A stretch of 49,439 bases of DNA from positions 1-49,439 of the forward strand of contig FLMG01002325.1 in NCBI GenBank assembly GCA_900088475.1, in the 5' to 3' direction. The position numbers were made by a program, and so were the translations under genes. This DNA comes from Hyphochytrium catenoides. Taxonomy: Eukaryota; Protista; Hyphochytriomycota. Under the pieces are notes generated by a model. The model did not search any database. It was not told where the DNA came from and saw only the letters and a program-made list of their open reading frames with translations. Shown here one piece after another: positions 4,468 through 49,439 of this stretch. Position 1 is the stretch's first letter; the number at the start of each line of letters is the position of its first letter.

Positions 4468-4812
4468 GTGTGGCTCCCCTCTCTGTGTCTAGTTCTTGAC
4501 CATCTCTTCCCTTTTTTCTTTTTTCTCTCTCACCATTTTCTCTTTCTGCAGTCCCATTTGTCTTCTCCCTCTCTCTCTCTCACTTTCTATTCTGCCTCAA
4601 TTCTCTCCGAAGACCTTCTCCCTGTCTCTCCTCCTCTCTCTCATCATACTCATCACTCTTCCTTAGTGCTGACAGAAGAGAAAGAAGACAATGAAAGAAG
4701 ACAGATTAGCCGCCGAAGAGAGAGAAGGCAAAGAACGGGAAAGTTCTTTCTGAGTGAGGAAAGAAGGCTGGAAGAGAGAAAGTGGCCTTTCCATGAGAGA
4801 AAGAGAGACCAG

Positions 4813-7800
4813 ATGGAAGGCTCTTTCTTGAGGGAAGGAGAGGAGGAAGGAGAGAGAGAGAGCAGATGGCAGAGACTCTTCAAGAAGCGAGAGCTCTCTC
4901 CTTCTCCCTGGACAGAGCAGAAGGATACAAAGGCCCTTTTCTCTCTCAGGCAGCAGCTCCTCCAGACAGAGACAGAGCATCAGTTCTCTCTCTCTTCTTC
5001 TCTCTCTTCCGTCTCCAACACCACTGCCTCTCTCTTCTCTAGCCCTTCTCTTTCCATGCCACCAAGTCTCTCTCTCCCTCTCTCTCTCTCTCCCTCTCTT
5101 TCTCTCTCTCCCTCATCTTCTCCCGTCCCGGCAGACCCGGACTCAAAGGTATTATCAGACTGGATTCAGAGAATGAGAGAAGAAAGTGAGAGCATCACCG
5201 TCCGCACTCTGCAGACTCTAGCCTCGACTCCAGGGAGGAAAGAGAAGAGAGAGAGAGACCAAGAGAGAGATGAAGAAGCAGGAGAGGAAGCGCGGCAACT
5301 CCTCAAGACCTGGACTCAAGTGAAGAGGGAAGAGGAGCAGATGCGAGGAGGAGAGAGAGAACGAAAGAGAGACAAAAGGTCCCAAGAAAGACTTAGAAAA
5401 AGCTCAAAGAATGCGGGAAGAAGAGTGAACCAGACCGCGGCCTCTTCTTCTTCTCCTTCTCTCTCTCCCTCTCTCTCTCCCTCTCTCTCTCTTTCTCGCC
5501 CTTCCCGAAACCCTCAGCCCTGGGACTTCACCTCTCCTTCTCTTCCCCGGCCGGGCATCAAGGTAGAAATTTCTGTCAAGAGACCCGAGAGGATGCAACG
5601 AGAGAGAGACAAACCGCTGAAGGAGGATGAAAGAAAGACAGAAGAGAGTCTTTCTGAGAGAGAAGAGAGAGAACCAGCAACAGATGAAGGAAACGACAAC
5701 ACGCGGGAAGAAAGAGACACGCCTGAGCACGGCCAGAACAGGGAAGAGACGGAAACAAAGAGAGAGAGACCTGACGATGAGGTTCTCTCTCTTCGCGCCC
5801 GAGTTGACACTCTCCGGCAGCTAGTACTCTCTACTTTCTCTCTCTTGGGACAAGATATCCAGCCAGAACTCCTGCCTCCTTCTTTCTCTCAGGAGTCTCT
5901 CCCAGGTCTCCCTCTCTCTCTCTTGAAAGAGGCACTGAGCGCGCAGGAAGGGAAATATAGGCAAATTCTTAAGGATGCAAGAGATAGGCTGGTGCAGGAA
6001 AAAGCCGAACAGAGAGAGACAGGGGAGAGAGGAGAGAGAGAGAAAGAGAACCTGGAGAAGCCACAGAGAGAAGAAGAGATAGAAGGAAAGAGCCAGGAGG
6101 CACAGACAGAGAAAGAGGAAAGGAAGAAGAGGGAGAGAGAGATCTGGTGCCGTTGGAAGCTTTTCCTCCGTCTAGGAAAGGCCCAGCATCTGGAACAGCG
6201 AAGGAAAGAGAGAGAGAAACGAGGGATTCTAGAGATTTGGAGAAGTGTCTCTCTTCGAAGAAGGAGACAGATGGACAGCGCAACTCTCCGGTGGCGCTTC
6301 CGCGTTCTCTCTCGCTTCTTTCGGATCTGGAGACTCTTCCAGGAGAATGTGAAGAGAGAAAGGGAGTTTATTGCTGCAGAGAGAGACTTACAGGTGCGAG
6401 CCGGAGCCATGGACGCGGTTCTCGTCCGCAATCTTTTGCTCTTATTATCACCTCTATGGCAATCTGCTTCTACCTTTTCTGCCATCTCTTCTTCCCCGTG
6501 TCTTACTACACTCTCCGTGTTTGTGTGTATATCTCCTACCTTGTTGCCTCTCTCCTACGCGCAAAAAGGCATTCTCTCTCTCTCTCTCCATCTCTCTCTG
6601 TCTCTCACATTCTTTCACATCTCGTATGTCTGTCTTTCGCCCTCATTTGGTCCGTTCTCTCTCCTTCCTTAGCTCGAAAGATTGAAGCTTGAGACTGCGG
6701 ACCGGCTGTACAACCGTGTGACTCTCTCTCGCTTTCTCATTTGCTGGCGAGACATAGTACAAGATGAGAGGGAGAAGAGAGACCAAGAAGAGGCGAGAAA
6801 GAGAAGACAGCGAGCACTCTCTCTTCTTGTTGAACGCTCCAAAGTACATCAGGCGGCAAGAGAGGTAAGTGTAGAGAGAAAGAGTTCCGCTGGCACACTC
6901 TCTCTCCTCAGTGCACTGCCTCTCTCTGTCATTTGTTACCGTTCTCTCTTCTTCTGTATGTCAACAGATATCTTTCGCTTCTCTCTCCCTTGCTCTGTCT
7001 CACTACTTGACACTTATGGACTTCGCTCTCGCTCTCTCCTGCTCTTCTCTCTCTCTCTTCCACACCCTCTCCCTTTCTCATTCTCTTTCGCTTTTCTCTC
7101 TATTTCTCTCTTTGACTCTTTCTCTCTCTTTCCCTTTTTCTGCACAACCCTGTCCTTCCTTCTTCCTCTCTTTCTACTCACTCTTCTCGTGCCGCATTTT
7201 CCTTCATTGTCTTACATCCTAATTCCTCTACTCGCTCTGATAATTTTAGGAGAACCCTGGGCGAGAAGTAGAAGAGGAGAAGCCCAACTTAGTAAAGAAG
7301 GAGAGACTGGAACAGGTGGAGAAGGAGGACAAGACTAGGAAGGAGCAAAGATCAAGAGATATGAAGAGAGAAAGAGGGGGAGAAAGAGAGAGAAAGCAGA
7401 GTTTTGATCCAGTAGTCGTTGCCTTAGAAGAGAGAGCGACAGCGAGAAAGAGAGCAAGAGAAGAGCTGAAACAGAAGTACCAGGAACAAAAGCGCCAGAG
7501 AGAAGAGGAGGAGAAGAAGAAGGAGGAAGAGAGACAGGAGCTTGAGCGGCAACTGAGAGTTGCTCAAGGGGAACAGGCGCTCAAAGAGAAGAGGTGATGT
7601 ACACTATGAGGGGTATTTTACCTCTCTGCCGAAAGACTTTTCTCTCTCTTTTTCTCTCTCTTCCCTTGTCCCACTTTCACGGTTCACCACTTTCTCTACA
7701 AAAGTACCAGCTCTAAAGCATCATGTCGCTTTTTTCTTCTCTGATCTCTCTTTTCTATCTGTCTGTCTCTCTCGCTTTCTCTCTTTCCCGCTCCCCTTTT

Positions 7801-9804: not shown

Positions 9805-12290
9805 TCAGTCTAGGGTCTGCTTTCTCTTCTTGTTGAAGGATCTCATTTGCTCCAGCTGTTCTCCGGGCAAAGGGTCATCACTCACGGAGAGGCGGCGCGT
9901 CTTAGGGACATTTGAGAGAGAAAAGACCTCCGTCAGTTGATGCAAGCGTGACCCACTTCACAATGACGATAGGAGAGAGGAGCTAGGACGAAGAAGCCAT
10001 AACAAAATGGAAGAAAGCATAACTCTCTGAACCTGCACTTGTCAAGGAGTCAAGGAGCCCATTACTAACGGCAACGGGTGGATAACAGGAAGCAACTAAA
10101 CCAAGCTTTGAAGGATACAGGCAGGAGCCTAGCTTTTCCTACATTGATCCAAGGATGCATCATCGCCTCCTCGGCTGTGAAGCGCTGTTCAGAATCCACA
10201 GCCAGCAGCCCTCGAAGCAAGGATTTGGCTAAAATAACGGGTCAAAGTAGTGAGAAAGGGAAGCACATGGAGATTGAGAGGACCAGGAACTACGACGGTT
10301 AATAAGTGGGAAGGGGTTCTCCACGCACCATCGTCTGAGAGCCTGCAGTGAGGAGGGAAGTCAACGGTTGAAGACCTGGCCAGGGGGTCAAAGGTGGGAG
10401 TGGTACCGCAGAGCCTGTTAAGATAATAGATCAGAGAGATAATTAGAACAAGAGAAAGAGGTGGGCGCGAGGACAAACAGGAAAGCAGCAGGAAAGAGTG
10501 CAGGTTCATATCTCTATAGAGAGAGAATATAGGGCGGGAACGACTGGAGGTTGAGCATTGCGCAGTTTAGCAGCTCTCTCTAACATTATATACAGCACGA
10601 CGCCTGCACTCCAAAGATCCACCGCCTGGTCATAACCCAGCCCCCTGCGCACTTCAGGAGCTAGATGTTTGTCGATATTAGATAATAGAAGAGCTCAGAT
10701 ACAGCGGCAGTCCGCAGCACGAGAGGTCGAGGAACGAACAGAAAGCAGTACGAAGATCGGTATAAAGAACGAGACAGTAAGAGATAGGGACGCAGGTAAG
10801 GGTTTGGGAGAAGAGAAATGGGGCAAATGGTAGGCAGAGTCAAGAGCGATAGGGAGATCACACATGGCACACAAAGGAGGCTATGGAGAGAGTGCGGGGC
10901 GATAACTCTCGACAGAGCAGAAGAAAGAGCGAAGAAGGATGCTACCCACCAACGTAATAGTCGCTCCCACAGGCCGTGTACGCTCTATCTCTTCTCCTAA
11001 CCTCATTGCTGTCCCCTGCCGTTATAGCCGCAAAGCCAAAGTTCTCAAGAGTCTTGACGAGGCCGAAATCGCTAAGCTTTATATCAACGATGCTGTCAGG
11101 GTTTGCCAACAGGATGTTCTCTGGTTTGATGTCTCTGTGTATGATGGAGTGGCGATGGAGGTAGGCGATCGCATCTAGGAGGCGAGCCATAACCTCAGAG
11201 GCATCTCTCTCGCTGTAAACCTTTACTTCCTCTAGCTTATAAANAGAGAGAGAGGGGATGGGGGGGGGGCGGAGAGAGAGAGAGAGCGAGAGAGAGAGCG
11301 AGAGAGAGCGAGAGAGAGAGAAAGAGAGAGCGAGAGAGAGAGAAAGAGAGAGAGTGACGGGAGAGAGAGAGTGAGTGAGAGAGAGACAGACAGACAGAGA
11401 CAGAGAGAGAGAGACAGAGACAGGGAGAGAGAGACAGAGAGAGAGAGACAGAGAGAGAGAAACGAATGCTTCACTGACATGAAGGTGGCACAATAGGGAA
11501 GATTTAAGGTTCACCGAAAGTAAGCCAGAAGACAAGACGTCCTCACCATTCCATGACCACGAATAGCTCTGTGTCCGTCTCAAAGAGCTCCTCCAGTGCT
11601 ATAATGTTCGGGTGATGGAGACGGGACAAAGCCAAGATCTCTTCTCTCAGGCGGGAAGCGCCGCCCACTCCTCGCTTGTCGATAATCTTTACGGCGTAGA
11701 GCTGTCCGGAAGCCTTGCGCCGACATACTCTAACTACCGAAACTCCTCCTCTGTATGGTAGAATAGAGACAGAAGAGTAACACGGTTAATAGCTAGCAGA
11801 AAGTCGCCCATCAACAGCTTGAGGTTAACGCAAAGGATATGAGGCTGGGCCAATTCACGATTGCGAAGACTCATGTATATATTGGTTGCTAGGAAGGCGG
11901 TGGATTGAGTCCACCAGTGGCTGTGCCCGCAAGATTACGACGAAGAGACAGAACGATGGCAAGAAGGGGATATACAGCCAAACCATGAGCGAATATGAAA
12001 GACTCAGGGACGCAGATGAGCCAAAGATGGCCTTATAGTAATAACATTTGAGGAAGAGGGACTGCAGAGACAGTAGGAAGCTACGGCGGCCTGCAAGGGC
12101 CACGAGGCGCCTACCTCCCGATGATCTGGCCGAGGTCATAAAAATCCAAAAATTCAGCGGTGCTTGGTCTGCTTTGCGCGATGCCCTCAGTCACTCGCAC
12201 CTGCTCTTGTGAACGGAAGAAGAGAGAGAGCGGGGGAAGAGGGGCGTGAAGTGCTCCTCCGCCAAAGGTCTCCTCTTTGTGCTCAGCCAT
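9805..12290 (-). CDS. CAMK-group Ser/Thr protein kinase (multi-exon; the N at 11244 hides part of one exon)
   Basis: Motifs across exons: YDLGQIIGR|GGVSVV, YAVKII, LHHPNII, HRDIKPENILL, LSDFG, ACGSDYYV|APE, AVDLWSAGVVLYI, LLAVDSEQRFTAEEAMMHPWI. In-frame ATG at 12290. The last exon (..NKKRKQTLD*) is tentative. Confidence 0.88.
11245..11460. repeat. (GA)n/GACA compound microsatellite in a kinase intron
   Basis: Continuous imperfect gagaga/gacaga run next to a single-N gap. Confidence 0.95.
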
Positions 12291-17760: not shown

Positions 17761-19767
17761 ATGGAAGACTTCTCGTTTTTGCTGTCCACCGCTATACTCA
17801 GCGTTATTATCGGTGGAGCTGTCGTCTTCTACTCTAATAAGACGAAGTATTATAACTCGGCCGCTAATAGCAAGAAGTCCACATTCTTGCCGAATGGCTC
17901 TGCGGTCCATGCGCAGAATGGTGTCCATACCGTCGAGAAGAAACCAGAGCCCCAACATCACTATCCAGGAGGCAAGGTAGCCCTCTTCTTCGGCTCTCAG
18001 ACAGGTACCGCCGAGGGCTTCTGCAACGATCTGGCCAAAGAGGGCAAGGAAGCAGGCTTTGACACCGCTGTCATTGACCTTGAAGAGTTTGACCTTGAAA
18101 GCTTGGACCAGTACACTTTCTGTGCCTTTCTCTTGGCTACGTATGGGGAAGGTGAGCCTACCGACAATGCAGCGACTTTCTTTCGTTGGCTGAAGGACAA
18201 GAGTGGGGAGCTCACCCCGGAGACGCTAACCGGGAAGAAGTTTACTGTCTTTGGCCTTGGGAACCGTCAATACGAGCACTATAACTTTATGGGAAGGTTT
18301 GTCGACAAGCGTCTTGAGGAGCTTGGAGGGGAGCGGGTATACAAGTACGGAGAAGGTGATGACGACGGCACTCTTGAGGAGGATTTCGAGGCTTGGAAGG
18401 AGGAGCTATGGCCCTCTATGAAAACTCACTTCCTGAGCTCCAGCGAACAGAGCAGCGTAGACCACGAAGCTTCAGGGCTGAAGCCAGAGTCTCTCGACAT
18501 CGAGGTGGAATACCTAACTGAAGAACAGGCAAAGAAGATGAGCTCAGAGATCTCCTCGGAAAAGATGAACAGAACTACCAAGCATTTCTTCACTGCAGAC
18601 ACTCTCTCTGTCCTTAAAAACCAAGAGCTGCGGCAGGACGCGACCGATGGCTCTACGAAGCACATAGAGCTCGACATCTCTGGTACAAGGGTTAATTATG
18701 AGATTGCCGATAACCTTGCGGTTCTACCTGACAACGATCACGAGGAAGTAGCCAGAATAGCAATGTCTCAGGGCTATAATCTAGACCAGTACATCACCCT
18801 CAAGAAGGTGAACGAGACAGCAGACGTGAAGTTCCCATTTCCATTCCCTTGCACGGTGCGGACTGTCCTTACTCGGTATTGTGACATCCTTACTCCTCCT
18901 AGACGGGCAATGCTCAAATCTTTCGCAGTCTTCGCCTCAGACAAGAAAGAGCAGGACAGGCTCCTCTTTCTTGCAGGGAAAGAAGGGAAAGAGGAGTTTG
19001 TCTCGTGGATAGAGAAGGAAAGGCGGACGATCGCTGAGGTGTTGGAGGCCTTCCCCTCGCTGAAGATCCCTCTAGACCATCTCATGTATAACCTGCCCAA
19101 CCTCAGTCCGCGATATTATACCATTTCCTCCTCGCCATCTGTACACAGTGGTGCCATCCACGTCACAGTCAGTGTCGTCAAGGATAACAAGGGAGACGGA
19201 AGGATTCACCGTGGTGTCTGCTCAAACTACCTGGATGAGCTCGTCCCTGGCAAGAGTAAAGTCCCTGTCTTTGTGAGAACGTCCACTTTTCGTCTGCCCA
19301 AGGACCCGTTGAAGCCCATTATTATGGTGGGGCCAGGGACAGGAATAGCTCCAATGAGAGCCTTTTTACAAGAGAAAGCTAGACAAAAGAAAGAAGCAGA
19401 TAAGGTTGGTCCAGTTGTCCTCTTCTTTGGCTGCAGGAAGAGAAGCCAAGACTTCATTTATAAGGAGGAGCTGGAGCACTATCAAAATCAGGGCTTCCTC
19501 ACTCTCTACACAGCTTTCTCTCGAGAGCAAGAGAAGAAGATCTATGTACAGGATAGACTTAGAGAGAAAGGGGAGGAGATGTGGAAGCTCGTCCATGACG
19601 GAGGAGCTTACATCTACGTCTGCGGTGGAACAGGAATGGGACAGGATGTAATGGCTGCGTTTGTTGAGATTGCCAAGAGAGAGGGGAAGATGTCGGACCA
19701 GGAGGCGTCTGCATATGTGAAGAATCTCCAAGAGCAGCACAGGTACATTCAGGAGTTGTGGTCCTAA
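17761..19767 (+). CDS. CPR: NADPH-cytochrome P450 reductase, intronless, 668 aa
   Basis: N-terminal membrane anchor; FMN motifs FFGSQTGTAE, ATYGEGEPTDNA and VFGLGNRQYEHYN; FAD motifs PRYYTISSS and GVCSNYL; NADPH motifs MVGPGTGIAPMR, FFGCR, AFSR, KIYVQ and YVCG; terminal ELWS. Confidence 0.96.
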   Translation: MEDFSFLLSTAILSVIIGGAVVFYSNKTKYYNSAANSKKSTFLPNGSAVHAQNGVHTVEKKPEPQHHYPGGKVALFFGSQTGTAEGFCNDLAKEGKEAGFDTAVIDLEEFDLESLDQYTFCAFLLATYGEGEPTDNAATFFRWLKDKSGELTPETLTGKKFTVFGLGNRQYEHYNFMGRFVDKRLEELGGERVYKYGEGDDDGTLEEDFEAWKEELWPSMKTHFLSSSEQSSVDHEASGLKPESLDIEVEYLTEEQAKKMSSEISSEKMNRTTKHFFTADTLSVLKNQELRQDATDGSTKHIELDISGTRVNYEIADNLAVLPDNDHEEVARIAMSQGYNLDQYITLKKVNETADVKFPFPFPCTVRTVLTRYCDILTPPRRAMLKSFAVFASDKKEQDRLLFLAGKEGKEEFVSWIEKERRTIAEVLEAFPSLKIPLDHLMYNLPNLSPRYYTISSSPSVHSGAIHVTVSVVKDNKGDGRIHRGVCSNYLDELVPGKSKVPVFVRTSTFRLPKDPLKPIIMVGPGTGIAPMRAFLQEKARQKKEADKVGPVVLFFGCRKRSQDFIYKEELEHYQNQGFLTLYTAFSREQEKKIYVQDRLREKGEEMWKLVHDGGAYIYVCGGTGMGQDVMAAFVEIAKREGKMSDQEASAYVKNLQEQHRYIQELWS

Positions 19768-37155: not shown

Positions 37156-40100
37156 CTAACTCTGCGGGCCCTCGATCGTCGCTCCCGCAAGTGGCTCGCC
37201 TGTGAGCGTGTGAAAGACTTCAGTCCAGGGCATTGAGTGCAACGCATCGACAAGGATACCAAGATCTGGTCGCGAGAGAGACTGCAACTCTGCGACGATC
37301 TGAGGAAGGGAGAGAGAGGGAAGCTTGTGCAGCACAGAGAGAAGAAAGGGTCTCTCCTCCTCATCTCTATATGGCAAGCCTGCTACCGCGATAGAGAGAG
37401 AGAGAGAGCCTAATGTAGGGATAGAGGACGGAGACTCCTCTTCATGATCCCTTGTTGGCTTTCCTTCCGCTTTCTCTCTCTTTTCTGCTGTCTCTTTGCT
37501 TAGCACTGGCTCCATGGTAACTGTAGGAGAAGCAAGAATCCCGTTGCTTGTTTCTTCTCCCCTCTCTACCTCAGGGATGTCAATTTGCCCTGTCTGTATG
37601 CGGTCTTTGCTTACCCCCTTCTCTATGTCTTTCTTCCCTTCTCCATTCTCCCCATCTCTCTCGCTCTCTTCACTCTCTCCTACGTACTGCACATCAAAGG
37701 TTCCATTCATTCTGATCCTCAGGATCCTCGCTCTCCGCCATTCTCTCTCTACACTCTCTAAGGCTTGGGAGAGGACAGCGACAGTGCTTCCCTCTTTCAA
37801 AGAGAGAGAGAGGGTGCTCCGTATAGAAGAAGGGAGCTCGGGACATAGCGAAGTAGTGTCTTTCTTCCCTTCCACTTCCTCCCCTTCCTCTACGACCTGC
37901 GTGTGCTCATATGGCTCAGCGGGTGTCGAACTTTCCTTTGGCATAGAGAGAGAAGGGGAGACAGCCGCTGTTTGAGCTATTGGGTTCTGCTGTGTCTCCG
38001 ATGAAGAAAAAAGCAACCTCTCTTTCTTTACACCTTTCTCTATCCGCTGGTCGTCGCAGAATCTGACGTCAAAGGTCCCATTCATACGGATTCGCTCTAT
38101 CAGCGCCAAGGCTGGGGTCCCAGATGGAAGAAGGACAGAGAGAGTCATACCCTCTCTCGGAATACCACGGACAGACGTTTCTTGACTGGTATCTTTCTTT
38201 CTATCATCATTTCCCTTCGGCGTGTCTCTCTCTCTAGCCTCCCGAGGAAACGCAAGCTCTATTGCATTCTTCAGACAAATGCTCTCCGGCACTCTATCCT
38301 CCCCCTTCTGCCGGTTGTCCTCTTGAGGGACGCTCCTTTCTCCCCATGGCGCTGTTCGCTCTCTCTCCTTTACTGTCTCCTGATCATCCAGCTGCGACTC
38401 CTTAGTGTTCTTCTCCTCGTCAGACTCTTTCTCATCATGAGAGAAGGGTGTCTTGCCTCTATCGTTGTCTTGTTCGACCGCAGTAGGAAGAGGAAGTCTA
38501 GCTTCTTCAGAAAAGGGATCGCTGAAAAGGCATTTGTCTTCTCTCCTCTCTTTCTCTGTCTCTGACACGCTCTTTCTTATCTCTTGCGCCCTCCCTTGTT
38601 CAGTAAACAGTGGAAGAAGAGAACGAGGAAGGTCCTCTGTCCCGTTAGTCCGACAGTCCAGTTCTTTCTCTGCAGGAGAGAGATTCTCCGACAGGAAAGA
38701 AGATTCTGTTTCGTGGCTCCTTTCTCTACCGTTTCTCTCAGCGTCGTTCTCTCTTCCTTTCTCTTTCAAAGGAGAACTTCTGCTTGTCCCTAGAAGATTC
38801 TCTAGGGCTTCTTCTTCCTCCGTCCTCTCCCCCATCTCTTCTCTGAAGGTAAGAAGACGGGCAGAGGCAGTCTCCTCTGATAGAGCAAAGGCTCTGATGG
38901 CAGTCGCTAGAAGATCATCGGAGAGAAACTGGCCCTCCTCCTTCTCCCTCTTTCTCTCTTTCTCATATGTCGCGTGTTCCTCTCTCTCTTCTCTTGGACT
39001 TGGCAAATGTAATGAAGGGACTGTTCTGCTTTCGTCAGCTTGTCTCTCCTTCTCTATCGCCTCCTGACCGTCTGCGTCCTTACTATGGACTATGAGGTCT
39101 TCTCTCTCTTTTGACTGCGCCTGCTCTGGCTCTTTCTCGTCTAGGGCCACGCTCATCGCTGGAGGCCTAAGGACGCCTTCTTGCTGGTTCCTGATGATGG
39201 TTTCCTTTCTTTCAAGCTCTCTTTCAACNNNNNNNNNNNNNNNNNNNNNNNNNNNNNNNNNNNNNNNNNNNNNNNNNNNNNCAGGTTCTCTTCTGATCCC
39301 TGCTGCTCGTCTCTCTCGGAAACAGGGGAAAAGGAGTCGCTCTTGGTCTCTTCCTGCTCGGCTCTTACCTGGAAATGAGCCTCTGCTCCTCTCTCTTCTC
39401 CTTGACTACTTCTTTGTTTGTCTGGGAGACCGGTCGACGATTCTCTCTCCGTTTCTTCTCCGTTGTCTCCGGAGAGTCTCCCTTTCTCATCCCGTCCTTC
39501 ACGTTCTTTCTCATTTTCTTCCAAGAGCCTCTGCTCCTCCGAAGTTCTTTTCAGTATAACTTCCCTGTCCATTCTTCTCTCTGTGTCTCCTCCATTGTCC
39601 GTGTTCTCTTCCTTTTCTTCATTTCGTTGTTCTACTTCCTCCTTTTCTCCCTCATCTCCATCGTACTCAGTGTATCTTTGAGTCTCTTCCTTCCCATTCT
39701 GCGCATTGTGCTTGCTTGCACTAGAAGCCTTCAGCGGTGCTTGGCTGACGCCACTGATGTTAGCGGTAGGCTCAGCAATATCGGGAGCAAGGACAGGAGA
39801 CAGAAAGAAGCATGAGCCCACAGGAGGTTGGAGAGCAGGACCATGTGAAGAGCAGGAGGGAGACAACGAGGAAATGGTCAAGGAAGAGCTGGTGTCCTTG
39901 ATGTCTGGATGGGCGACAAGAGAAAGAGTTGAAGCTTCGTTGCCCCGATGAGGAACGGCTCCCTGCTGCACCTGAGAAAGGTCCTGATGCTTTCCGTGTC
40001 GTGTCTCTCTTGCTTCCTCTCCATCTGTTGGCTCTTCACCAGTCTCTCTTCCGGCAGCCTCGGTCACTTCTAGCTGAGGCTGGGCGGGAAGGAAGGTCCC

Positions 40101-43100
40101 TTCAGGAGAGAAAGAACATGGAAGAGCAGATGAGGTCTCTCCTTCCTTCAATGATTCACGTACGGAGGGGAAGGGAGCCGTGGTGGATGTTTCTTCCCTC
40201 GGCCTTTCTATGGAGAGTGAGGACGGCGCTGCAAGGGAGGTACCGGCCACCTCAGGGAACGAAGAAGAGACAGGAGGCGGCATGCTCTCTCTCTCCTCAA
40301 GCTTTTCGTCTCTGATCTCCTGCACTCTCTCCTCGTGCGCAGGCTGATCAACCTCTCGCTCTCTAACTTCTTGGTAGTGTTCGCTGGAGCACTCTCCCTC
40401 AGAGTCCTTGATCTGTCTCGCGGTCTGTTCCTTTATTTCTTCTTTGTCCCAGCCTCTGGTTATTTTATGAGAACTTGTGGAGATGGTTTCCTCTCTCTCC
40501 GGCACCGCTGCTGGCGCATTATCCACTCTCACACACTCTTTCTCTTTGTCCTTTGACTGTTCCCTCAATTCCTCGTTGAGGGTCTCACTCTGTTCTGGTC
40601 TCAGTTCAATGAAGTCTGCCTCCGTCGTGGTTCTCTCTCTCGTTTGCTCTTCCTCTCCAGCCACTTCCGCCTCTCCTTTTCTCTTTACCTCCCGTCCAGC
40701 GGGAGCCTCTCCGTCTTTCTGAGCTTCAAATCCTTGCGCTCTCCCTTGCGCTGTTTCTCCCTGGCTGAGATCTCTCATCTCCGGGAAGCTTTCCTCTTGC
40801 ACTGTCTCTTCGCAGGCTGACGTCGTGTCAGTATCTCTTCCTTTCAGACACTGAGCTTCCTCCGCATCTTCCGGCTGCTCTGCCTCGCCATTGATTGGCG
40901 CTGCGTCTCCACGTAGCACTTTTTCTTCTTGTCGCTCAATTTCGTGCTTCACCTGCGTCGCTTGCACGTGTTCTTCTACGTTCTTCTCCGTCTCTTCTCT
41001 CATTGACTTTTCTTTCTCTCTGGAAGATTGGAGTGTGTGTCTTTCGTCTCTCTTGATCGTAGCTCTCGCCTCTTTGTCTCTCACTCTTTCCTGTTTCTCT
41101 TCTTCCTCCAGAGATCTCCTGTCTTCTACTCCTCCGGCTCTAGATGGATTCCCTGCATTATGAGGCCCACTAAGCGAGAGGGAGATGTTCTCCTTGTTTT
41201 CTTCCTCAATTGTTGGCGCTGTCTTGCAATGGGAGAGAGAAGAACCGCCAGCTTTGCCAGCAGAGAGAGTGAAAGGGCAGCTTGAGCTCGCGGTTTCTAC
41301 AATCTCTACGTCTTCCCGAGCATTACCCAGGGTGTCCCTCCGTTCCCCTTGAGTGGTCTCCCTTTCTCGATCCTCTCCGGTGGCATCCACTCTCTCTCCC
41401 CCATGGAGCTCAGAGGTCTCACTAGCCTGCAAGAAAGAAGGAGCTGCCTTCTGCCTCCTCCGTCCTCTCTCTCTCTTCAACCAAGCTCTCACGGCTTTCT
41501 GCAAGACCTTGGCAGCGGAGGCGTGAAGCTGATGGAGCTGGACAAGGAGTGTACGCCGAGAGGTGCGAAGAGACGTAGAAGGAGAGAGAGGAAGAGATGA
41601 GGAGCTAGCGGCCGAAAGAGGCGGAAGAGATTTGGTCCCCAGAAGAGGAGAAGATGAACGGGACGAAGGAGAAATAGAAGACGAAGGAGGAACTCTACTT
41701 CCAAGGAGAGGAACCGATATAGCGTGGCTGCCGTCAGCTAAGGGAAGAGAAGAGGAAGAGGAAGAGAGAGCAGAAGACAAAGGAGGTGGAGCAGGGGTGT
41801 GGACAGGCATCCGTCCCTCGGTATCCTGACTCTCGCTGGTCAGAGAATCATTTGCTTTCTCTCCATCTCTTGGCTTTCTTCTTCGTAGCTCTCTTCCTGT
41901 CTGGGGCAATTCTTTCAAGCTGTGCGGCTGGCTAGTTCCCTCTCGCGGCCTATCCTCTTTGCTCTCTCCCATCGTGCGCCCGTCCATACTCTCCCTGAGC
42001 TCCTTCTCAGGCCCCGGCTCTTCCTTCTGTCCCTCGACACTGGTCAAGCTCTCTCCTCTTTCCACGGCTTTCTCTGGGTCTCTCTCACTTTTTAGGGCCA
42101 CTTTTTCCTGCCTCTCTCTTTCCTTTTCAAGCTGGTCCTCGCCCTTCTCTTCTCTCTCTCTCTTGGGCAACTGCTCAACGTCATCTTCTGGCGCCTTTCT
42201 CTCTTCCGTCGTATACCCTGCTTTTCTCACAAAGTCTTCCCTCTCCTTATCAATTTTCGTGGTGGTACTTGTTTCTCTTCTTCCTCTCTCTTCAGCTCCT
42301 TGACCGTCCACTGGGGTCTCTGAAGAGAGAGTTTCGGATGAGAGAGAGAGAGAAGACGTCAAGAGTGACTCTTCCTGTCGTCTGCAGACACCCTCTATGA
42401 ACTCTTGCATGGAAGAAAGCTTCTCGTTCAATGCAAAGAGAGAGAGAGTCGGGCCATCGTCCTCTTCCTCGCTCCCTTCCTCTTCTTTAACTTTGCTTTG
42501 CGCTGTCTTCGGTTGGACTTCCTGGCTCAGACCTCCCTTCTCTTCCCCTCTCCGCAGTCCTGTCCATCCTTTGGCTAAATGATCAAAGTCATAGAGATCA
42601 TCTCCATCGTCTTTCTTAGGTGGGAGATTGGGAAGAGACTCTTTCTTTCTTCGTTCCTCCAGCCTCGTCTCCCTCTTTTCACGGCCTTGATTGGCTTTGG
42701 AGGAAGGTGAGAGCCGTTGTAGGACTAACTTTGCAGCCTCCTGAGCTTCCAGAAGCCGAGCTACAGCTTGATCCACTGCCCCACTCTCCTCGTCTCCTTC
42801 TTCGTCCCTTTCCCTCTCCTTGTCTCTATCTCTCTTCCCTCTTTCTGTCCACGTCTCCTCCTCTTCGTCCTCTATTAAGTCTTTTCCTTTATGCTCTTCT
42901 TCATAGGCAGATAGAAGAAGCGCCGCTGCCCCCGCGATCTTCCCTTTCAGACTACCTTCCGACCCCCGTGTAGACTTGGATGCAAGCTCTCGCAATCTTC
43001 TGACATGAGAGACTGAGACGGAGCCTTCTCTCTCTTCGATGATCTTTCTCTCTTCGCCTACGTCCTGCTCCTCATCTCCAGCTCTCCTTAGGTTCTGTTC

Positions 43101-46100
43101 CCGAAGAATCTCTAGGGAAGGAGTAGAACCTTCAGGGAGAACAGGGGTGCCAAGGAGAGAGAAGAGAGACGCGGAAAGAGAAGAGCAGTGCAAAATGAGA
43201 GACGAGGCGTCAGTCAAACTAACTGTCTCTCTTAATAAGGCTTGATTTGCAAGCGTCCTCTTTGATCTCACCCCTTTCAGCCCTTCTCATGAGTTCTCTC
43301 TCGCTACTGCTCGCAAGGTCACTCTCTCTCCTAAGCGGCGGTGCGTACAAGCCGTAGCTCCCCAAGCCAGGCAATGCTGTTGAGGGTGCTTTCGTTTCTG
43401 TTCTTCCTTCGTCCTTAATGCCTACATTCATTAGCGACAAGCAAAGTTACTCTGTGGCGGCCAAGGACAGCACCAAGGTAGGGATCCCAAAGAGGAGAGA
43501 GAAAAATAATAGCACCGATCTCTTATTCTCTTCTCTCTTTTAACTTCACTAAGGAGAAGAGAGAGACGAGCGAGAATGTAGGTTGACTGAGACAGGAAGA
43601 GAGGGGATAGAAGGGAAAGGAAAGGAGAGAGAGAGGTGATGAGAAGAAGAACAGAAAGTCGATCAGAGAGCTTATAGAGCTCACCTCTAAAAGATGAGCC
43701 CCGAGAACCACGCGGTGTTCTCTTCTCTACTCCATACTCTAGATCACGCTTAGCCTGAGTGTCCCGTCTTCTTGCACTCAGATGACCGCTCCCTCCCAAG
43801 CTGCTCCTGACCAGACAACAAGCTCAGAGAAGAACAACCACAGAGGACAGAAGCAGAAGACTAGAAAAAAAGTATGAGGTACAGCAAGCACCTTTGTGGA
43901 GAAGCAGGACGATGAGGAAAGAGAAGGAGTAAAATTGCGAGTGCAGGGTATCGACACTAATGTTAGGTCCCTCCGGATCATGGGGTTGTCTACCTGCTTC
44001 TGTCTTTAGGGCTTCTAGGGGACAGATGAACCCTGGACAAAGCCTACGACAGCAACCAGGTCATCCCAGGCGAGAGAAGAGACAGAGAAAGAACGTAGAG
44101 TGCGGAATGGAATCGTACGAGGAATGGGTATTTGCTTAAAGCTTATAGCAGGAAGGCGGTTGGAGAAGATGTTTGATGGAAGACAAGAGAGAGACTTAAT
44201 CGACCCGGCACCTGCTTCGCCTCTTCATAGGCTCTCTCTATGCTGTTACAGAGCTCTGCCATCTTCTCTCTATGCTGGCTCACAATATTGTGGGCCCGCT
44301 GGTACCACTAGATATGGAAACTTAGTCAGAAGTGTGAGAGGAAGGAAGAGAAACAAAGAAGGAGTGAATGCAGAAGAACAAAAAGATAAAGAAACAGAGA
44401 GATCGAGAGCGGCATGGCAACTCTAGCAAAGAAAAAGGGAAAGAAGCAGTGTGATCTTGTTTGTCCTTGTCTGTCATCTTGGAGGTCTGCCATTTCTAAG
44501 CGTTTCCCTACCTGCAGTGATCCCTCCGCTCTCTGGGTGTACTCTGCCTCTACGCCGAGGTTATAAAGGGCAATCGCAAGGGTTGTCGTCGTCTCCATGC
44601 GCAGAGTCTCTATCTCTTCTTTGTCCACCTCTTTTATGCCCATGTCGTGGGTCTGTTTCCCTTTCGCTTCACTCTCTCTCTCCAACGTACGCAGCTCTTC
44701 TTGGGCGTGAAAGACTGCATCATGAGCATTCTCGTATGCTTCCTCGTGTCTAGTAGCAGAACAGTCAGGGGCGGAGAGGCTCAGTGGCATGCAAAATAAA
44801 AAGGGAGCGATGTTCAAAGGGAGATCGGCGCAGAGAAGAGAAAGAGAACGAGGGAGAGAGACTCGCAAAGAAAATAGAAACAGAACTGCATGGGCGAGGA
44901 CACTGGCGCCAGAAGGCCCAAACAGGGAGCTACGAGCTTAGAAGGAGAAAGGATATTCAGGAACGATAAAGGAGAAGCTAAAGGAGGAAGAGAGAGGAAG
45001 AGCGAGAGCGAGAAAAGAACGAGAGACGGAAAGTAGGAGAGAAAGACAGAGAGAGACAGAGAGTCAGAGAAAAGGTTTGGCCGAAAGAGATATACCTTCC
45101 AAGCTCGGAGAGTACGGCACAGAGATTGAGGTACGCCAGAGCTGTGTTCCTCACTTGGGGGAAATCTGCTGAGGCTTGAACTGCGTCTAGAAGATATTCC
45201 AGGGCAAGCTTCTTCCTCCCCGTCCTGGGCAAAGAAGAGCAGGAAGGAGAGAGACAGCCACGGGCGGAGGTCATTGAGAGAGCCCAGAAGAGGCATGAGG
45301 ATGTTTATGAGACGGAGTCAGAAAGGGGAGATAGTATATCTCTGACTAAACAGATCAAGAGCGCAAGAAAAGACAGGGAGGAGCTGCGAGGAAAGCGGAG
45401 ACTTTCTATAGAGAGAGATGTATCGGACTAGCTTCGCCTTAGAAAGCTAGCGTCTGTCGTTCCTTGTCTTCTCTTACCTCCTGTGCATACAACCGATGTT
45501 GTTCAAGGTGAGGACCAGCAAGGGCTGCAGGAGTGGCGAGGGAGAGAAGCTTTCTAGGAGCTGATTTGTCTCAAGAAGGACGCGTTCACACTCCTCTGTC
45601 TCCCCTTGGAAGTACAAACGTGAGTTAGCTTAAAGGGCAAAGCGAGTAGTGGAGAGAAGAGGGGAACGAAGACACCTGAGGCTGAAAGCACGAAAGGAAA
45701 GAACGACGAGTGAGGAGCGATAACGGGAAAGAGAGAGAGACACAGAGAGATGGACCGATCCCGAAAGTGGAAAGTTACCTTGAGCTAGCAGCTCCATGGC
45801 CAGCTTGTTGCTCGCCTTAGCATATTTGACAGCAGCTGCGGCGGTAACCTCGTCCTGCAGACGAGGAAGGTTAAGAGCTAAGTTGAGCGGAGTCGTTACC
45901 CCGATCTTTCTGCGTACACTTCATATAGGACACTCTCTCCTCTTCCTCTTGGCTCTTCTTCTTACTCTGTTTGAGGTTACTTAGCCTACCATAGATGCCT
46001 GCTCATCCCTTCCTTGCTGCTTGTCTCTCCTACTCTTCTCTTTCTCTCCCTCTCTGGAGAGTCGGCTATGTGTTCCCCTTCCCTTACAATCTCAGGCCAC

Positions 46101-47400: not shown

Positions 47401-47831
47401 AGGGAAGAGAGAAGGAGGAGGAGGGGAAGGGGAGGAGTAGGAGAAGCGTACTGAACGCACGGACAGACTGGAGAGCGAACTAGAGGCAGGTGGTAGATGA
47501 GGTAGATAGATGTCTTGGCTTGGCCTAAGACAGAGCACTGTTAGTGCTAAAGTAAAGGGTGAGGGATAGAGATGATTAGAAGGCAACGTCAAGGGGCCAG
47601 GGCGCTTATATAGATGCTCCCACTGCATTGCATCAACCTAGCATCGCACCGTCGGGTGTACTTTGCCCCCGTCTTTGGCGAAAAAAATCGAAGGTTTTGA
47701 GATAAAGCTTTTATCAGAGAGGTGTCCAAGAGTCTTCAGAGCCCCAGGAGCTGGAGACTAGACACCGAGGTTGCAGACGGAAGACGAGAGGGCCGCACTG
47801 AGGTCCTTCTTTCTTTTTTATTCTCTTTAGA

Positions 47832-49439
47832 ATGCCGCCCAAGGCTTCTGGCAAGGGCAAGAAGAAGAAGAATGACGTCCCTGCAGTGGGTAAGCTAGCA
47901 AACTCTTATGAGGGAAAGCCTGCCACAGTCTGCTCATCCTCACCCCATCCTTTGCTCTAGAGTCTTCAAACATGGCCGCAGTGCTCAAGTACTTTCAGTC
48001 CATGTGCAGGCTCCTTTCCATAGATCCCAACCCGCAACTGCTCAAGCTGCTCAAGAATAAAGTGACGGAGGAAGCAGAGAGCCCCGTCCAGCAGGTGCGA
48101 ACTGTCTGAAAGGACACCTGGCTAACAAGAGCAGGAGATGGAGCACTGAGAATGGGAAGTTTGGGAGGGAGAGAGACTAAAGATGGACAACTGAGAGGAG
48201 TTGGTGATGAGCAGGTAACGGAGTCTCACATGCTAATATTATCGTCTTTTCAGCTCATTCTGGAGTCAGAGATCGGGACATTGTCGGCAGGAGACATGAA
48301 AGCACTCGTCAGCGCACTTTTGATATCCTTTTAGCGTTTTCGAAGGCATCCGTTCTGCAACTCTTCTTTTTTCCTCAGTGGATCTTAGACTATTACCACC
48401 ACCTCTATCTTTATCTCGCTTCTTCTTCTCCCTCTCTTGCTCTGCTCCTCTCTCTCTCGCGCGCGCACTCCCTCTTCTTCCGCGCATCCTCCATCCTCTC
48501 GGCAACTTGACTTCTTCTCCTTCGACGCACACTCCTTCGTCTTTCTTCCCGTGTTGCTTTCTCTGTCTCTTTCTCTGTCTCTTTCCATTCCGTCTCACTA
48601 TTTATCGTCATGTCGCCACCATTATTCCATGTTGTCCTGCCGGATGTGCGATCCACCTTAACTCCTGTTCACGCGAGCACGCCAAGCGTTTCTGGGATCC
48701 CCTACAGACTTCTTTCCTCTCTTAGATTCTGGCAGTGCACAATCACTAACGATGCTGCAGCTAATCTGGTAACTCTATCACGACCATCCCTGTCGTCTTA
48801 CTCTATCTTTCTGTGTCTCTCTTTGTCTCTCTATCTATCTATCTAACCATCTACTATCTCTCCGTCTCTCACACTCTCTCTCACTTTCTCTCTCTCTCTC
48901 TCTCTCTCCCTCCCTCTCTCCCTCTCTACCTATCTATCTATCTATCTATCTCCCTCTCTCTCTCTCCTCTCTCCCTCTCTCTCCATCCTCTCTCTGTTCT
49001 CTTTATGATTTCTTGACTTGCCCCTCTTTGGCTAACTCTGCAGACACTCTATGAACTAACTCCCTGCATCTCCATGTGCTGCCTACCGCCCTTGTCATCA
49101 CCTTAAACCAGTCCGCGCTCATCCGGACGCAAGAGCTTCCACTATTCAAGTTCTTGGAGCTGGTAGACACGCGGATAGGAACTACAGGGTACGGAGGCCG
49201 TCCGTGTGGGAGACTCTCTTCTTTTGGGGTCAAACGTTCCCGTCTACCCACAGGGTCATTCTTTATCTTCCCTACATGCAGATGCACATTCTGGTTTTAG
49301 TTGTTTCGACAGATGTTCTTACTCCTTATCTTCTTCAACGTATGGCGGCGGCCGGGGATTTTACTTCTGTCTGAGCCGAATCTGACTTATTTTGTTTACC
49401 CATCAGCTTTGACGCCTTAGGGAAGGCGCTCTCTATGGA
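47832..49439 (+). CDS. Leucine-rich repeat (RNI-like, LRRC73-like) protein, 5' part; continues beyond the window
   Basis: Exons: MPPKASGKGKKKKNDVPAV | ESSNMAAVLKYFQSMCRLLSIDPNPQ... | LILESEIGTLSAGDMKALVSALL | ASTPSVSGIPYRLLSSLRFWQCTITNDAAANL | SALIRTQELPLFKFLELVDTRIGTTG. Confidence 0.75.
48323..48672 (+). other. U12-type (minor spliceosome) AT-AC intron, 350 nt, phase 0
   Basis: 5' site ATATCCTTTT, branch CCTTAAC at 48656-48662, terminal AC ~10 nt later. Removing it restores the frame. Confidence 0.88.
48800..49000. repeat. (ATCT)n plus (CT)n compound microsatellite in an LRR gene intron
   Basis: tatctatcta runs interleaved with ctctct. Confidence 0.9.

What the first reader, a model, noticed from the sequence alone, without database searches (positions are those of the whole stretch)
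48323..48672. Canonical U12-type AT-AC intron: evidence of a minor spliceosome in this protist
Seen: exon 48254-48322 (LILESEIGTLSAGDMKALVSALL) hits TAG three codons later and is followed by ATATCCTTTT. At 350 nt downstream lie CCTTAAC and then TCCTGTTCAC|GCG. Excision joins in phase 0 to ASTPSVSGIPYRLLSSLRFWQC, a good LRR segment. Established: RTATCCTT, a CCTTAAC branch site close to the 3' end and AT-AC termini define U11/U12-dependent introns, which are rare and have been lost in many protist lineages. Inference: this organism retains U11/U12/U4atac/U6atac. Standard gene predictors would mis-model this gene.
Basis: partly seen in the sequence, partly recalled or inferred. Interest (0 to 1): 0.8.

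Follow-up and report, generated by a model that had tools for sequence, protein, structure and literature searches.

The report
U12-type AT-AC intron in stramenopile gene
A 350-base intron in a repeat-protein gene of a stramenopile protist carries every sequence signal of the rare "minor" (U12-type) class, which is a sound but expected find because its relatives, the water moulds, already have such introns.

Summary
Exon 48254-48322 is followed by ATATCCTTT. CCTTAAC lies at 48656-48662, with its branch A 11 nt before the AC at 48671-48672. Removing 48323-48672 (350 nt) joins two open exons in phase 0.

This is the only one of five introns in the partial six-exon gene (47832-49439, + strand) that is not GT-AG. 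No GT/GC-AG alternative keeps the frame without deleting part of the repeat pattern or using a weak donor. The full motif set is expected about 0.02 times per window by chance, and about 2e-6 per intron at a frame-compatible junction.

I read it as a real U12-type AT-AC intron (confidence 0.85), but splicing itself is not shown:
- No RNA run held the locus.
- No orthologue could be retrieved.
- No minor snRNA lies in this window.

The organism is a deep stramenopile. Its cytochrome P450 reductase is at most about 49% identical to oomycete proteins. Indirect features fit Hyphochytrium catenoides. Minor introns and U11/U12/U6atac are published for Phytophthora, Saprolegnia and Blastocystis, so this is a new member of a known kind.

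The scan has noted at least 18 other U12 candidates, including one in an RNPC3 gene, on other pieces of this genome. All are unchecked.

The parts
47832..47889 (+). Exon 1 (ATG at 47832; MPPKASGKGKKKKNDVPAV, ends in phase 1), followed by a GTAAGC donor
   Evidence: In-frame coding score +22 bits, best of the three frames. All three allelic differences seen in DNA run X2 are synonymous third positions.
47890..47960 (+). Intron 1, GT-AG (GTAAGC...CTCTAG), 71 nt
47961..48094 (+). Exon 2 (..SSNMAAVLKYFQSMCRLLSIDPNPQLLKLLKNKVTEEAESPVQQ)
   Evidence: +19 bits in frame
48095..48253 (+). Intron 2, GT-AG (GTGCGA...TTTCAG), purine-rich, 159 nt
48254..48322 (+). Exon 3, LILESEIGTLSAGDMKALVSALL, 69 nt, phase 0 at both ends
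   Evidence: +8 bits, best frame
48323..48672 (+). Candidate U12-type AT-AC intron, 350 nt, phase 0, pyrimidine-rich
   Evidence: All 60-nt windows inside it score negative for coding. It has no unusual RNA fold (z = -0.61).
48323..48331 (+). 5' splice site ATATCCTTT (the site that pairs with U11 and later U6atac)
   Evidence: Matches the RTATCCTTT consensus at 9 of 9 positions. One of 3 ATATCCTTT in the window against 0.18 expected.
48655..48662 (+). Branch-site box ACCTTAAC (core CCTTAAC; the site that pairs with U12). The presumed branch A at 48661 lies 11 nt before the last intron base.
48671..48672 (+). 3' terminal AC (in context TTCAC|GCG)
   Evidence: Of the three AC/AG ends within 8-20 nt of the branch A (48672, 48677, 48680), only 48672 keeps the reading frame.
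48673..48768 (+). Exon 4, ASTPSVSGIPYRLLSSLRFWQCTITNDAAANL, 96 nt
   Evidence: the proposed frame is the best of three, but weakly, +2 bits
48769..49111 (+). Intron 4, GT-AG (GTAACT...AACCAG), containing (CT)n and (CTAT)n microsatellites
49112..49188 (+). Exon 5, SALIRTQELPLFKFLELVDTRIGTT(G)
49189..49406 (+). Intron 5, GT-AG (GTACGG...CATCAG)
49407..49439 (+). Exon 6, (G)FDALGKALSM..., cut off by the end of the window

Best explanation
Bases 48323-48672 are a true U12-type (minor-class) AT-AC intron in a protein-coding gene of a deep-branching stramenopile, probably the hyphochytrid Hyphochytrium catenoides.

By analogy with characterised systems, the likely mechanism is as follows. All of it is inferred; none is shown here.
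- The U11/U12 di-snRNP recognises both ends of the intron together.
- U11 pairs with ATATCCTTT at the 5' end.
- U12 pairs with CCTTAAC and bulges the branch adenosine at 48660/48661.
- U4atac/U6atac.U5 then joins, and U6atac replaces U11 on the donor.
- The first 3' end at the permitted 11-nt distance, the AC at 48672, is used.

The product reads ...ALVSALL|ASTPSV... and keeps two consecutive leucine-rich-repeat-like units intact. The other four introns of the gene are ordinary GT-AG introns.
For: - **Donor:** ATATCCTTT sits exactly where the exon frame must end, with a TAG three codons on.
- **Branch site and 3' end:** the CCTTAAC core has its branch A 11 nt from a YAC end.
- **Frame:** the join is phase 0 to phase 0. 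Of the three possible 3' ends in range, only 48672 keeps the frame.
- **Gene model:** all six proposed exons have the proposed frame as the best-scoring of three under a codon model trained on other genes of the window. The intron scores negative throughout.
- **Alternatives are poor:** all 15 frame-preserving GT/GC-AG alternatives use weak donors (GTCAGA, GTCGGC, GTCAGC, GC..). All but the two GCGTTT ones also delete part of exon 3 and/or exon 4. Examples are the helix DMKALVSALL, which matches DAAANLSALI of the next unit, or the strand LRFWQC. The two GCGTTT alternatives instead read 11 intron bases and drop the first codons of exon 4.
- **Chance is low:** 0.021 strict motif sets per window, and about 2.4e-6 per intron at a compatible junction, or about 0.16 across some 67,000 introns.
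- **The gene looks live:** allelic differences in exon 1 are all synonymous.
- **The lineage fits:** the cytochrome P450 reductase's nearest relatives are oomycetes at 49% identity. Oomycetes and Blastocystis have minor introns and snRNAs (PMC2846911; PMC10639083; PMC11347168).
- **Unchecked leads only:** 18 first-reader notes describe U12-type introns, and one an RNPC3 gene, elsewhere in this genome.
Against: - There is no transcript evidence. The only RNA run that matched did so on (CT)n/(CTAT)n repeats, and no joint was seen.
- No orthologue was found, so neither the junction peptide nor the conservation of the intron position could be checked.
- The exons gave no Pfam or PDB hit on their own, so the repeat-protein reading is by pattern only.
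- Internal repeat similarity is weak statistically (p = 0.02 to 0.15).
- No minor snRNA or minor-specific protein gene lies in this window.
- Genome-wide, about 0.16 such sites could arise by chance, so this one case alone does not prove that the machinery exists.
- Exon 4's coding score is only marginally positive.
Confidence: 0.85

Rival explanations
1. The intervening sequence is removed by the major spliceosome at a cryptic GT-AG or GC-AG pair, for example the GTCAGC donor at 48308 joined to the CAG acceptor ending at 48735. On this view the U12-like motifs are a coincidence in pyrimidine-rich intron sequence.
For: Fifteen frame-preserving GT/GC-AG pairs exist. Words such as RTATCCTT are favoured by the local CT-rich composition: the real word ranks only 5th to 7th of 105 same-composition words. 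Two other ATATCCTTT sites in the window (11840 and 44956, - strand) have no workable 3' partner.
Against: None of the alternative donors resembles the four GT donors actually used in this gene (GTAAGC, GTGCGA, GTAACT, GTACGG). Thirteen of the fifteen alternatives delete residues that follow the repeat pattern. The other two read 11 intron bases from a poor GCGTTT donor and lose the first codons of exon 4. The joint chance of donor, branch box, spacing, AC end and frame at this junction is about 2e-6.
Confidence: 0.07
2. The locus is a decaying or untranscribed gene copy, so the intron signals, even if once functional, are not in use.
For: No RNA evidence was found. No homologue was retrieved for exon 2. 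The gene is cut by the end of the window, so its integrity downstream is unknown.
Against: Six exons stay open and in register, and all five introns have intact ends. The three allelic differences in exon 1 are all synonymous, and the one in exon 2 is a conservative R-to-K change. The proposed frame scores best in all six exons.
Confidence: 0.05
3. It is an AT-AC intron, but the major (U2-type) spliceosome removes it, as happens for a small class of AT-AC introns.
For: U2-type AT-AC introns exist in animals and plants (established knowledge). The long pyrimidine-rich body of this intron resembles the U2-type introns of this genome.
Against: By established knowledge, U2-type AT-AC introns lack the ATATCCTT donor and the CCTTAAC box close to the 3' end. 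Both are present here in full, at the U12-specific spacing of 11 nt.
Confidence: 0.03

Closest known systems
U12-type AT-AC introns of oomycetes (for example in the peptidyl-prolyl isomerase gene of Phytophthora sojae, P. ramorum and P. infestans; dozens in Saprolegnia)
   Same: They lie in the same supergroup, and probably the sister lineage. They share the ATATCC donor, a branch box near the 3' end, and AT-AC ends. They are rare among thousands of GT-AG introns. U11, U12 and U6atac genes are reported in that clade (PMC2846911, PMC10639083, PMC11347168).
   Different: The host gene differs (here an unnamed repeat protein). The intron is much longer (350 nt). The organism is at most about 49% identical to oomycetes in a conserved enzyme. 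Splicing and snRNAs were not shown here.
Minor introns of Blastocystis sp. subtype 1
   Same: Blastocystis is a stramenopile. According to PMC10639083, 77% of its minor introns are AT-AC.
   Different: Blastocystis has hundreds of minor introns, and from my memory its introns are very short. Nothing tested here shows that the present genome is enriched: RTATCCTT is not exceptional against same-composition words.
Canonical animal and plant U12-type AT-AC introns (Tarn & Steitz 1996; Burge, Padgett & Sharp 1998 consensus /ATATCCTTT ... TTCCTTAAC ... YAC)
   Same: It matches the donor consensus at 9 of 9 positions and the branch core at 7 of 7. The branch-to-3' distance falls within the 10-15 nt range. 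It has a YAC end and no requirement for a polypyrimidine tract between branch and 3' end.
   Different: The base before the branch core is A rather than T (ACCTTAAC against TCCTTAAC). The intron is phase 0, which from my memory of the literature is the least favoured phase for minor introns. Function was not tested.
U2-type AT-AC introns
   Same: Terminal dinucleotides AT and AC.
   Different: These lack the extended U12-type donor and branch box that are present here.

Membership tests
U12-type (U11/U12-dependent, minor-class) intron, AT-AC subtype | Extended 5' splice site /RTATCCTT(T) starting at the first intron base | tested here: met
   ATATCCTTT at 48323-48331, 9/9
U12-type (U11/U12-dependent, minor-class) intron, AT-AC subtype | Branch-site box TCCTTAAC (core CCTTRAY) complementary to U12 snRNA | tested here: met
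   ACCTTAAC at 48655-48662. The core matches 7/7 and the first T is replaced by A.
U12-type (U11/U12-dependent, minor-class) intron, AT-AC subtype | Branch adenosine about 10-15 nt (at most about 20-25) upstream of the 3' splice site | tested here: met
   The A at 48661 is 11 nt from 48672
U12-type (U11/U12-dependent, minor-class) intron, AT-AC subtype | Terminal dinucleotides AT...AC (or GT...AG) with a YAC/YAG 3' end | tested here: met
   AT at 48323-48324; CAC ending at 48672
U12-type (U11/U12-dependent, minor-class) intron, AT-AC subtype | Excision at exactly these sites gives a continuous, sensible coding sequence | tested here: met
   The join is phase 0 with no stop. The proposed frame scores best in all six exons. 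The other 3' ends in range break the frame, and the GT/GC-AG alternatives use weak donors and change exon residues. Homology across the junction could not be tested.
U12-type (U11/U12-dependent, minor-class) intron, AT-AC subtype | Transcripts show the 48322^48673 junction | tested here: inconclusive
   The only RNA run that matched did so on microsatellites. No joint was found and no RNA depth fell on the exons. The spliced-junction pattern is absent from metagenome contigs.
U12-type (U11/U12-dependent, minor-class) intron, AT-AC subtype | The genome encodes U11, U12, U4atac and U6atac snRNAs and minor-specific proteins (65K/RNPC3, 48K, 35K, 31K/ZCRB1, 25K, 20K) | not testable with these tools
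   Only this window is readable, and Rfam finds none in it at gathering score or at E<=1. An unchecked first-reader note reports an RNPC3 gene elsewhere in the genome.
U12-type (U11/U12-dependent, minor-class) intron, AT-AC subtype | Splicing depends on the minor spliceosome (loss on U12/U6atac inactivation) | not testable with these tools
   Needs an experiment
RNI-like leucine-rich-repeat protein (host gene) | Significant match to an LRR profile or to a solved LRR structure | tested here: not met
   Single exons gave no Pfam family at E<=1 and no PDB chain at E<=10. Only the by-eye pattern LxLxx.I..xG..aL..aL and a weak internal repeat (p=0.02) support it. The spliced protein could not be submitted because it has no reference.

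The most novel reading that the evidence does not exclude
The genome, probably that of the hyphochytrid Hyphochytrium catenoides, keeps a sizeable set of minor introns dominated by the AT-AC subtype. It would hold many more than the two or three known in Phytophthora, together with a complete minor spliceosome. That would make it the best free-living reference for reconstructing how minor introns were kept or lost across stramenopiles. A second U12-like site in this same window (GTATCCTTC at 10118, tandem TCCTTGAC, - strand) and at least 18 unchecked notes elsewhere point that way.
Probability: 0.25. Interest if true: 0.45.

Novelty: new member of a known kind. Interest (0 to 1): 0.3.

Why it matters
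If transcripts confirm it, the intron adds a lineage to the list of protists that kept the minor spliceosome. That lineage is apparently the hyphochytrids, for which I found no report of minor introns in the searched literature. It would help date minor-intron losses within stramenopiles, where ochrophytes have lost them while oomycetes and Blastocystis have kept them.

Practically, gene predictors limited to GT-AG and GC-AG introns will truncate or mis-join this gene and others like it. Any annotation of this genome should therefore allow AT-AC introns. It does not change what is known about how minor splicing works.

Tried and rejected
**RNA evidence.** Both run searches and the single read-laying run gave only microsatellite matches in three foreign runs, plus the genomic run itself. 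No joint was seen.

**Orthologues.**
- A full-library phmmer search with exon 2 (44 aa) returned only spurious tandem-repeat proteins.
- The word-indexed protein search cannot find full-length relatives of short exon pieces because of its length filter.
- The spliced protein has no reference, so I did not type it in.
- A scan of metagenome contigs with the exon 2 peptide (after a size slip) found nothing. Neither did a scan with a codon-degenerate spliced-junction pattern.
- The ESM Atlas gave no meaningful neighbour for exon 2.

**Gene family.** Pfam on the four exons and PDB on exon 4 gave no hits.

**snRNAs.** Rfam at gathering score and at E<=1 found no snRNA in the window.

**Minor-intron richness.**
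- The excess of RTATCCTT (9 against 2.1 in shuffles) looked promising. Against same-composition words it ranks only 5th to 7th of 105.
- Most sites lie inside open reading frames, antisense to them, or inside introns.
- I rejected this as evidence of richness.

**Structure.** The intron RNA folds no better than shuffles.

**Organism.**
- An exact look-up of the reductase protein found no record.
- A single-gene tree left the window's protein as a long unresolved branch among stramenopiles.
- An early guess of Physarum or an apicomplexan was dropped.

Full report
**1. The observation**

- An acceptor, TTTTCAG, ends at 48253.
- The exon 48254-48322 reads LILESEIGTLSAGDMKALVSALL.
- The next bases are ATATCCTTTTAG, so the open frame would close three codons later.
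- The box ACCTTAAC lies at 48655-48662, 333 bases after the first A of the donor. TCCTGTTCAC follows and ends at 48672.
- The frame reopens at 48673 with ASTPSVSGIPYRLLSSLRFWQCTITNDAAANL and runs to a GTAACT donor at 48769.
- The excised stretch is exactly 350 nt, and the join is phase 0 to phase 0.

**2. The gene around it**

I could build a clean partial model of six exons on the + strand:

| Exon | Coordinates |
|---|---|
| 1 | 47832-47889 |
| 2 | 47961-48094 |
| 3 | 48254-48322 |
| 4 | 48673-48768 |
| 5 | 49112-49188 |
| 6 | 49407-49439 (cut by the end of the window) |

- The other four introns are ordinary GT-AG introns, with donors GTAAGC, GTGCGA, GTAACT and GTACGG.
- I trained a codon-usage model on two long open reading frames elsewhere in the window. 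Under it, the proposed frame scores best of the three in all six exons, which is (1/3)^6, about 0.001, if frames were random.
- Every 60-nt window inside the 350-nt stretch scores negative. The background model included these same introns, so the frame preference is the independent part of this test.
- The genomic run that holds the locus shows two haplotypes over 47737-47943. The three differences in exon 1 (47843, 47861, 47885) are all synonymous third positions, and the one in exon 2 (48009) changes Arg to Lys. This is what a gene under purifying selection looks like.

**3. Is it more than chance?**

- ATATCCTTT occurs three times in the window against 0.18 in dinucleotide shuffles.
- In 1000 first-order Markov simulations of the window, I counted a strict combination: ATATCCTT, then CCTTAAC within 1 kb, then AC 8-16 nt after the branch A. 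It occurred 0.021 times per window on both strands, with no condition on exons.
- Using the pyrimidine-rich composition of this gene's own introns, I allowed 80 donor positions and 110 acceptor positions and required the frame to be kept. The chance for one intron is about 2.4e-6, which is about 0.16 across some 67,000 introns.
- So a single such site in a whole genome is not by itself overwhelming. At this particular junction, however, it is very unlikely to be accidental.

**4. Alternatives at the junction**

- I enumerated every GT-AG and GC-AG pair that keeps exon 3 and exon 4 in frame without a stop. There are 15.
- All use donors unlike those of this gene (GTCAGA, GTCGGC, GTCAGC, or GC donors).
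- All but the two GCGTTT pairs delete part of exon 3 and/or exon 4. Examples are the segment DMKALVSALL or the strand-like LRFWQC.
- The two GCGTTT pairs instead read 11 intron bases and drop the first codons of exon 4.
- DMKALVSALL aligns with DAAANLSALI of the next unit (p = 0.02 by shuffling).
- Three AC or AG ends lie within 8-20 nt of the branch A: 48672, 48677 and 48680. Only 48672 keeps the frame.

**5. What could not be shown**

- *Transcripts.* The RNA search returned one metatranscriptome with a 0.05 share of words. When laid, it and two other foreign runs matched only the (CT)n and (CTAT)n tracts at 48396-48511 and 48744-48859. There was no depth on any exon and no joint.
- *Orthologues.* A full-library phmmer search with exon 2 found only spurious tandem-repeat proteins. 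Two metagenome scans found nothing. The organism's own proteins are not in the protein collection.
- *The spliced protein.* It has no reference, so I did not type it in.
- *Gene family.* Single exons hit no Pfam family and no PDB chain. 'Leucine-rich repeat' is therefore a reading of the pattern, not a database result.
- *snRNAs.* The window contains none, and the rest of the genome is out of reach.

**6. The organism**

- A single-exon NADPH-cytochrome P450 reductase gene at 17761-19767 has its best matches in oomycetes at 49% identity. Brown algae, diatoms and raphidophytes follow at 44-46%.
- In a quick tree it sits as a long unresolved branch among stramenopiles.
- Several features match the published Hyphochytrium catenoides assembly (PMC5795050), which reports:
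  - a diploid genome with SNP frequency near 0.0275;
  - 312-610x coverage;
  - Illumina GAIIx plus HiSeq data;
  - a Platanus assembly of 4758 scaffolds with N50 of 35.6 kb;
  - 3.64 introns per gene, with mean length 208 bp.
- The corresponding features here are two haplotypes at about half depth each, a word depth near 340, short N gaps, runs dated 2011 and 2017, many small pieces, and no public proteome hit.
- Unchecked scan notes of asfarvirus-like and giant-virus-like insertions in the same genome match that paper's theme.
- I hold this identification at about 0.6. It is inference, not proof.

**7. Comparison with what is known**

- Minor snRNAs and a few U12-type introns (two AT-AC, one GT-AG) are documented in Phytophthora (PMC2846911).
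- Dozens of minor introns are reported in Saprolegnia and hundreds in Blastocystis, 77% of them AT-AC. Ochrophytes and alveolates appear to lack them (PMC10639083).
- A full-text search listed no paper among its best ten that links Hyphochytrium with minor splicing. The genome paper mentions spliceosomal introns only in passing.
- The find is therefore a new member of a known kind, in a place where phylogeny predicts it.

**8. Is the genome rich in minor introns?**

- RTATCCTT occurs nine times against 2.1 in shuffles. Among the 105 words of the same composition it ranks only fifth to seventh.
- Most copies lie inside long open frames, antisense to them, or inside CT-rich introns.
- One other site deserves attention. 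On the - strand, a CaMK-like kinase exon ends ...HPWINVGKARLLP and is followed at 10118 by GTATCCTTC. A tandem TCCTTGAC-TCCTTGAC (10056-10041) follows, with a CAG ending at 10033. That makes an 86-nt U12-like GT-AG intron. The frame then stops after 24 codons, whereas a distal AG at 9901 gives a more protein-like tail, TRRLSVSDDPLPGEQLEQMRSFNKKRKQTLD. RNA data are needed to decide.
- The scan's index lists 18 first-reader notes on U12-type introns on other pieces of this genome, in genes named ICMT, VAC14, a MAPKK, TRPC4AP, DCTN3, TMTC, YAE1 and TRF4. It also lists one note on an RNPC3 gene. None has been checked, and I could not read those pieces. I treat them as leads, not support.

**9. Verdict**

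- The best explanation is a real U12-type AT-AC intron removed by a minor spliceosome (0.85). The recognition steps are inferred from the well-studied animal and plant systems.
- The rivals are a cryptic GT-AG junction (0.07), a dead gene (0.05) and major-spliceosome AT-AC splicing (0.03).
- Interest is modest (0.3). The intron is correct and useful for annotation, and probably a first for its order, but it is not surprising.

Noticed in passing
window 10118-9901, - strand: The last intron of a CaMK-like kinase gene starts with GTATCCTTC directly after ...HPWINVGKARLLP. A tandem TCCTTGAC TCCTTGAC (10056-10041) lies 9 nt before a CAG ending at 10033, giving an 86-nt U12-like GT-AG intron. The frame then stops after 24 codons. 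A distal AG at 9901 (218 nt) gives a more protein-like C-terminus. It may be a second minor intron, alternative 3' sites, or a coincidence.
   Followed up: partly
window 47806-47831, + strand: A pyrimidine tract ending in TTTAG sits one base before the ATG of the repeat-protein gene. It looks like a 3' splice acceptor, suggesting a 5'-UTR intron or trans-splicing. Another reader noted the same pattern genome-wide (s1-347986).
   Followed up: no
window 47737-47943: The genomic run X2 carries two haplotypes here, each at about half depth. They differ by 14 substitutions and two insertions. The three differences in exon 1 are all synonymous. Depth also halves at 48628-48743, around the 3' splice site, but the second allele there was not shown.
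   Followed up: partly
window 5063-5505: (GA)n-rich and (CT)n-rich tracts form long imperfect inverted repeats. They produce sub-threshold plant-miRNA hits in Rfam on both strands. They lie inside a 734-aa 'ORF' (4468-6672) that has no Pfam domain and is probably not a real gene.
   Followed up: partly
window 17761-19767, + strand: An intronless NADPH-cytochrome P450 reductase gene (668 aa; Flavodoxin_1, FAD_binding_1 and NAD_binding_1 domains). Its nearest relatives are oomycetes at only 49% identity, and the exact protein is absent from the public protein collection.
   Followed up: yes
window 37156-43271, - strand: Two adjoining long open frames (666 and 1372 aa) with no Pfam domain. The second frame holds an N gap at 39229-39281, close to where the two meet at 39153-39156. 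They may be one very large gene.
   Followed up: no
window 11840 and 44956, - strand: Two further exact ATATCCTTT copies. One follows a possible start MSLRNRELAQP of the kinase gene but has no frame-compatible 3' end. The other lies inside a CT-rich intron of a TPR-like gene. Neither looks like a working donor.
   Followed up: partly
window 48095-48253 versus 48323-48672 and 48769-49111: Within one gene, intron 2 is purine-rich (GA) while introns 3 and 4 are strongly pyrimidine-rich, with (CT)n and (CTAT)n microsatellites. This echoes other readers' notes on GA/CT-biased introns in this genome.
   Followed up: no
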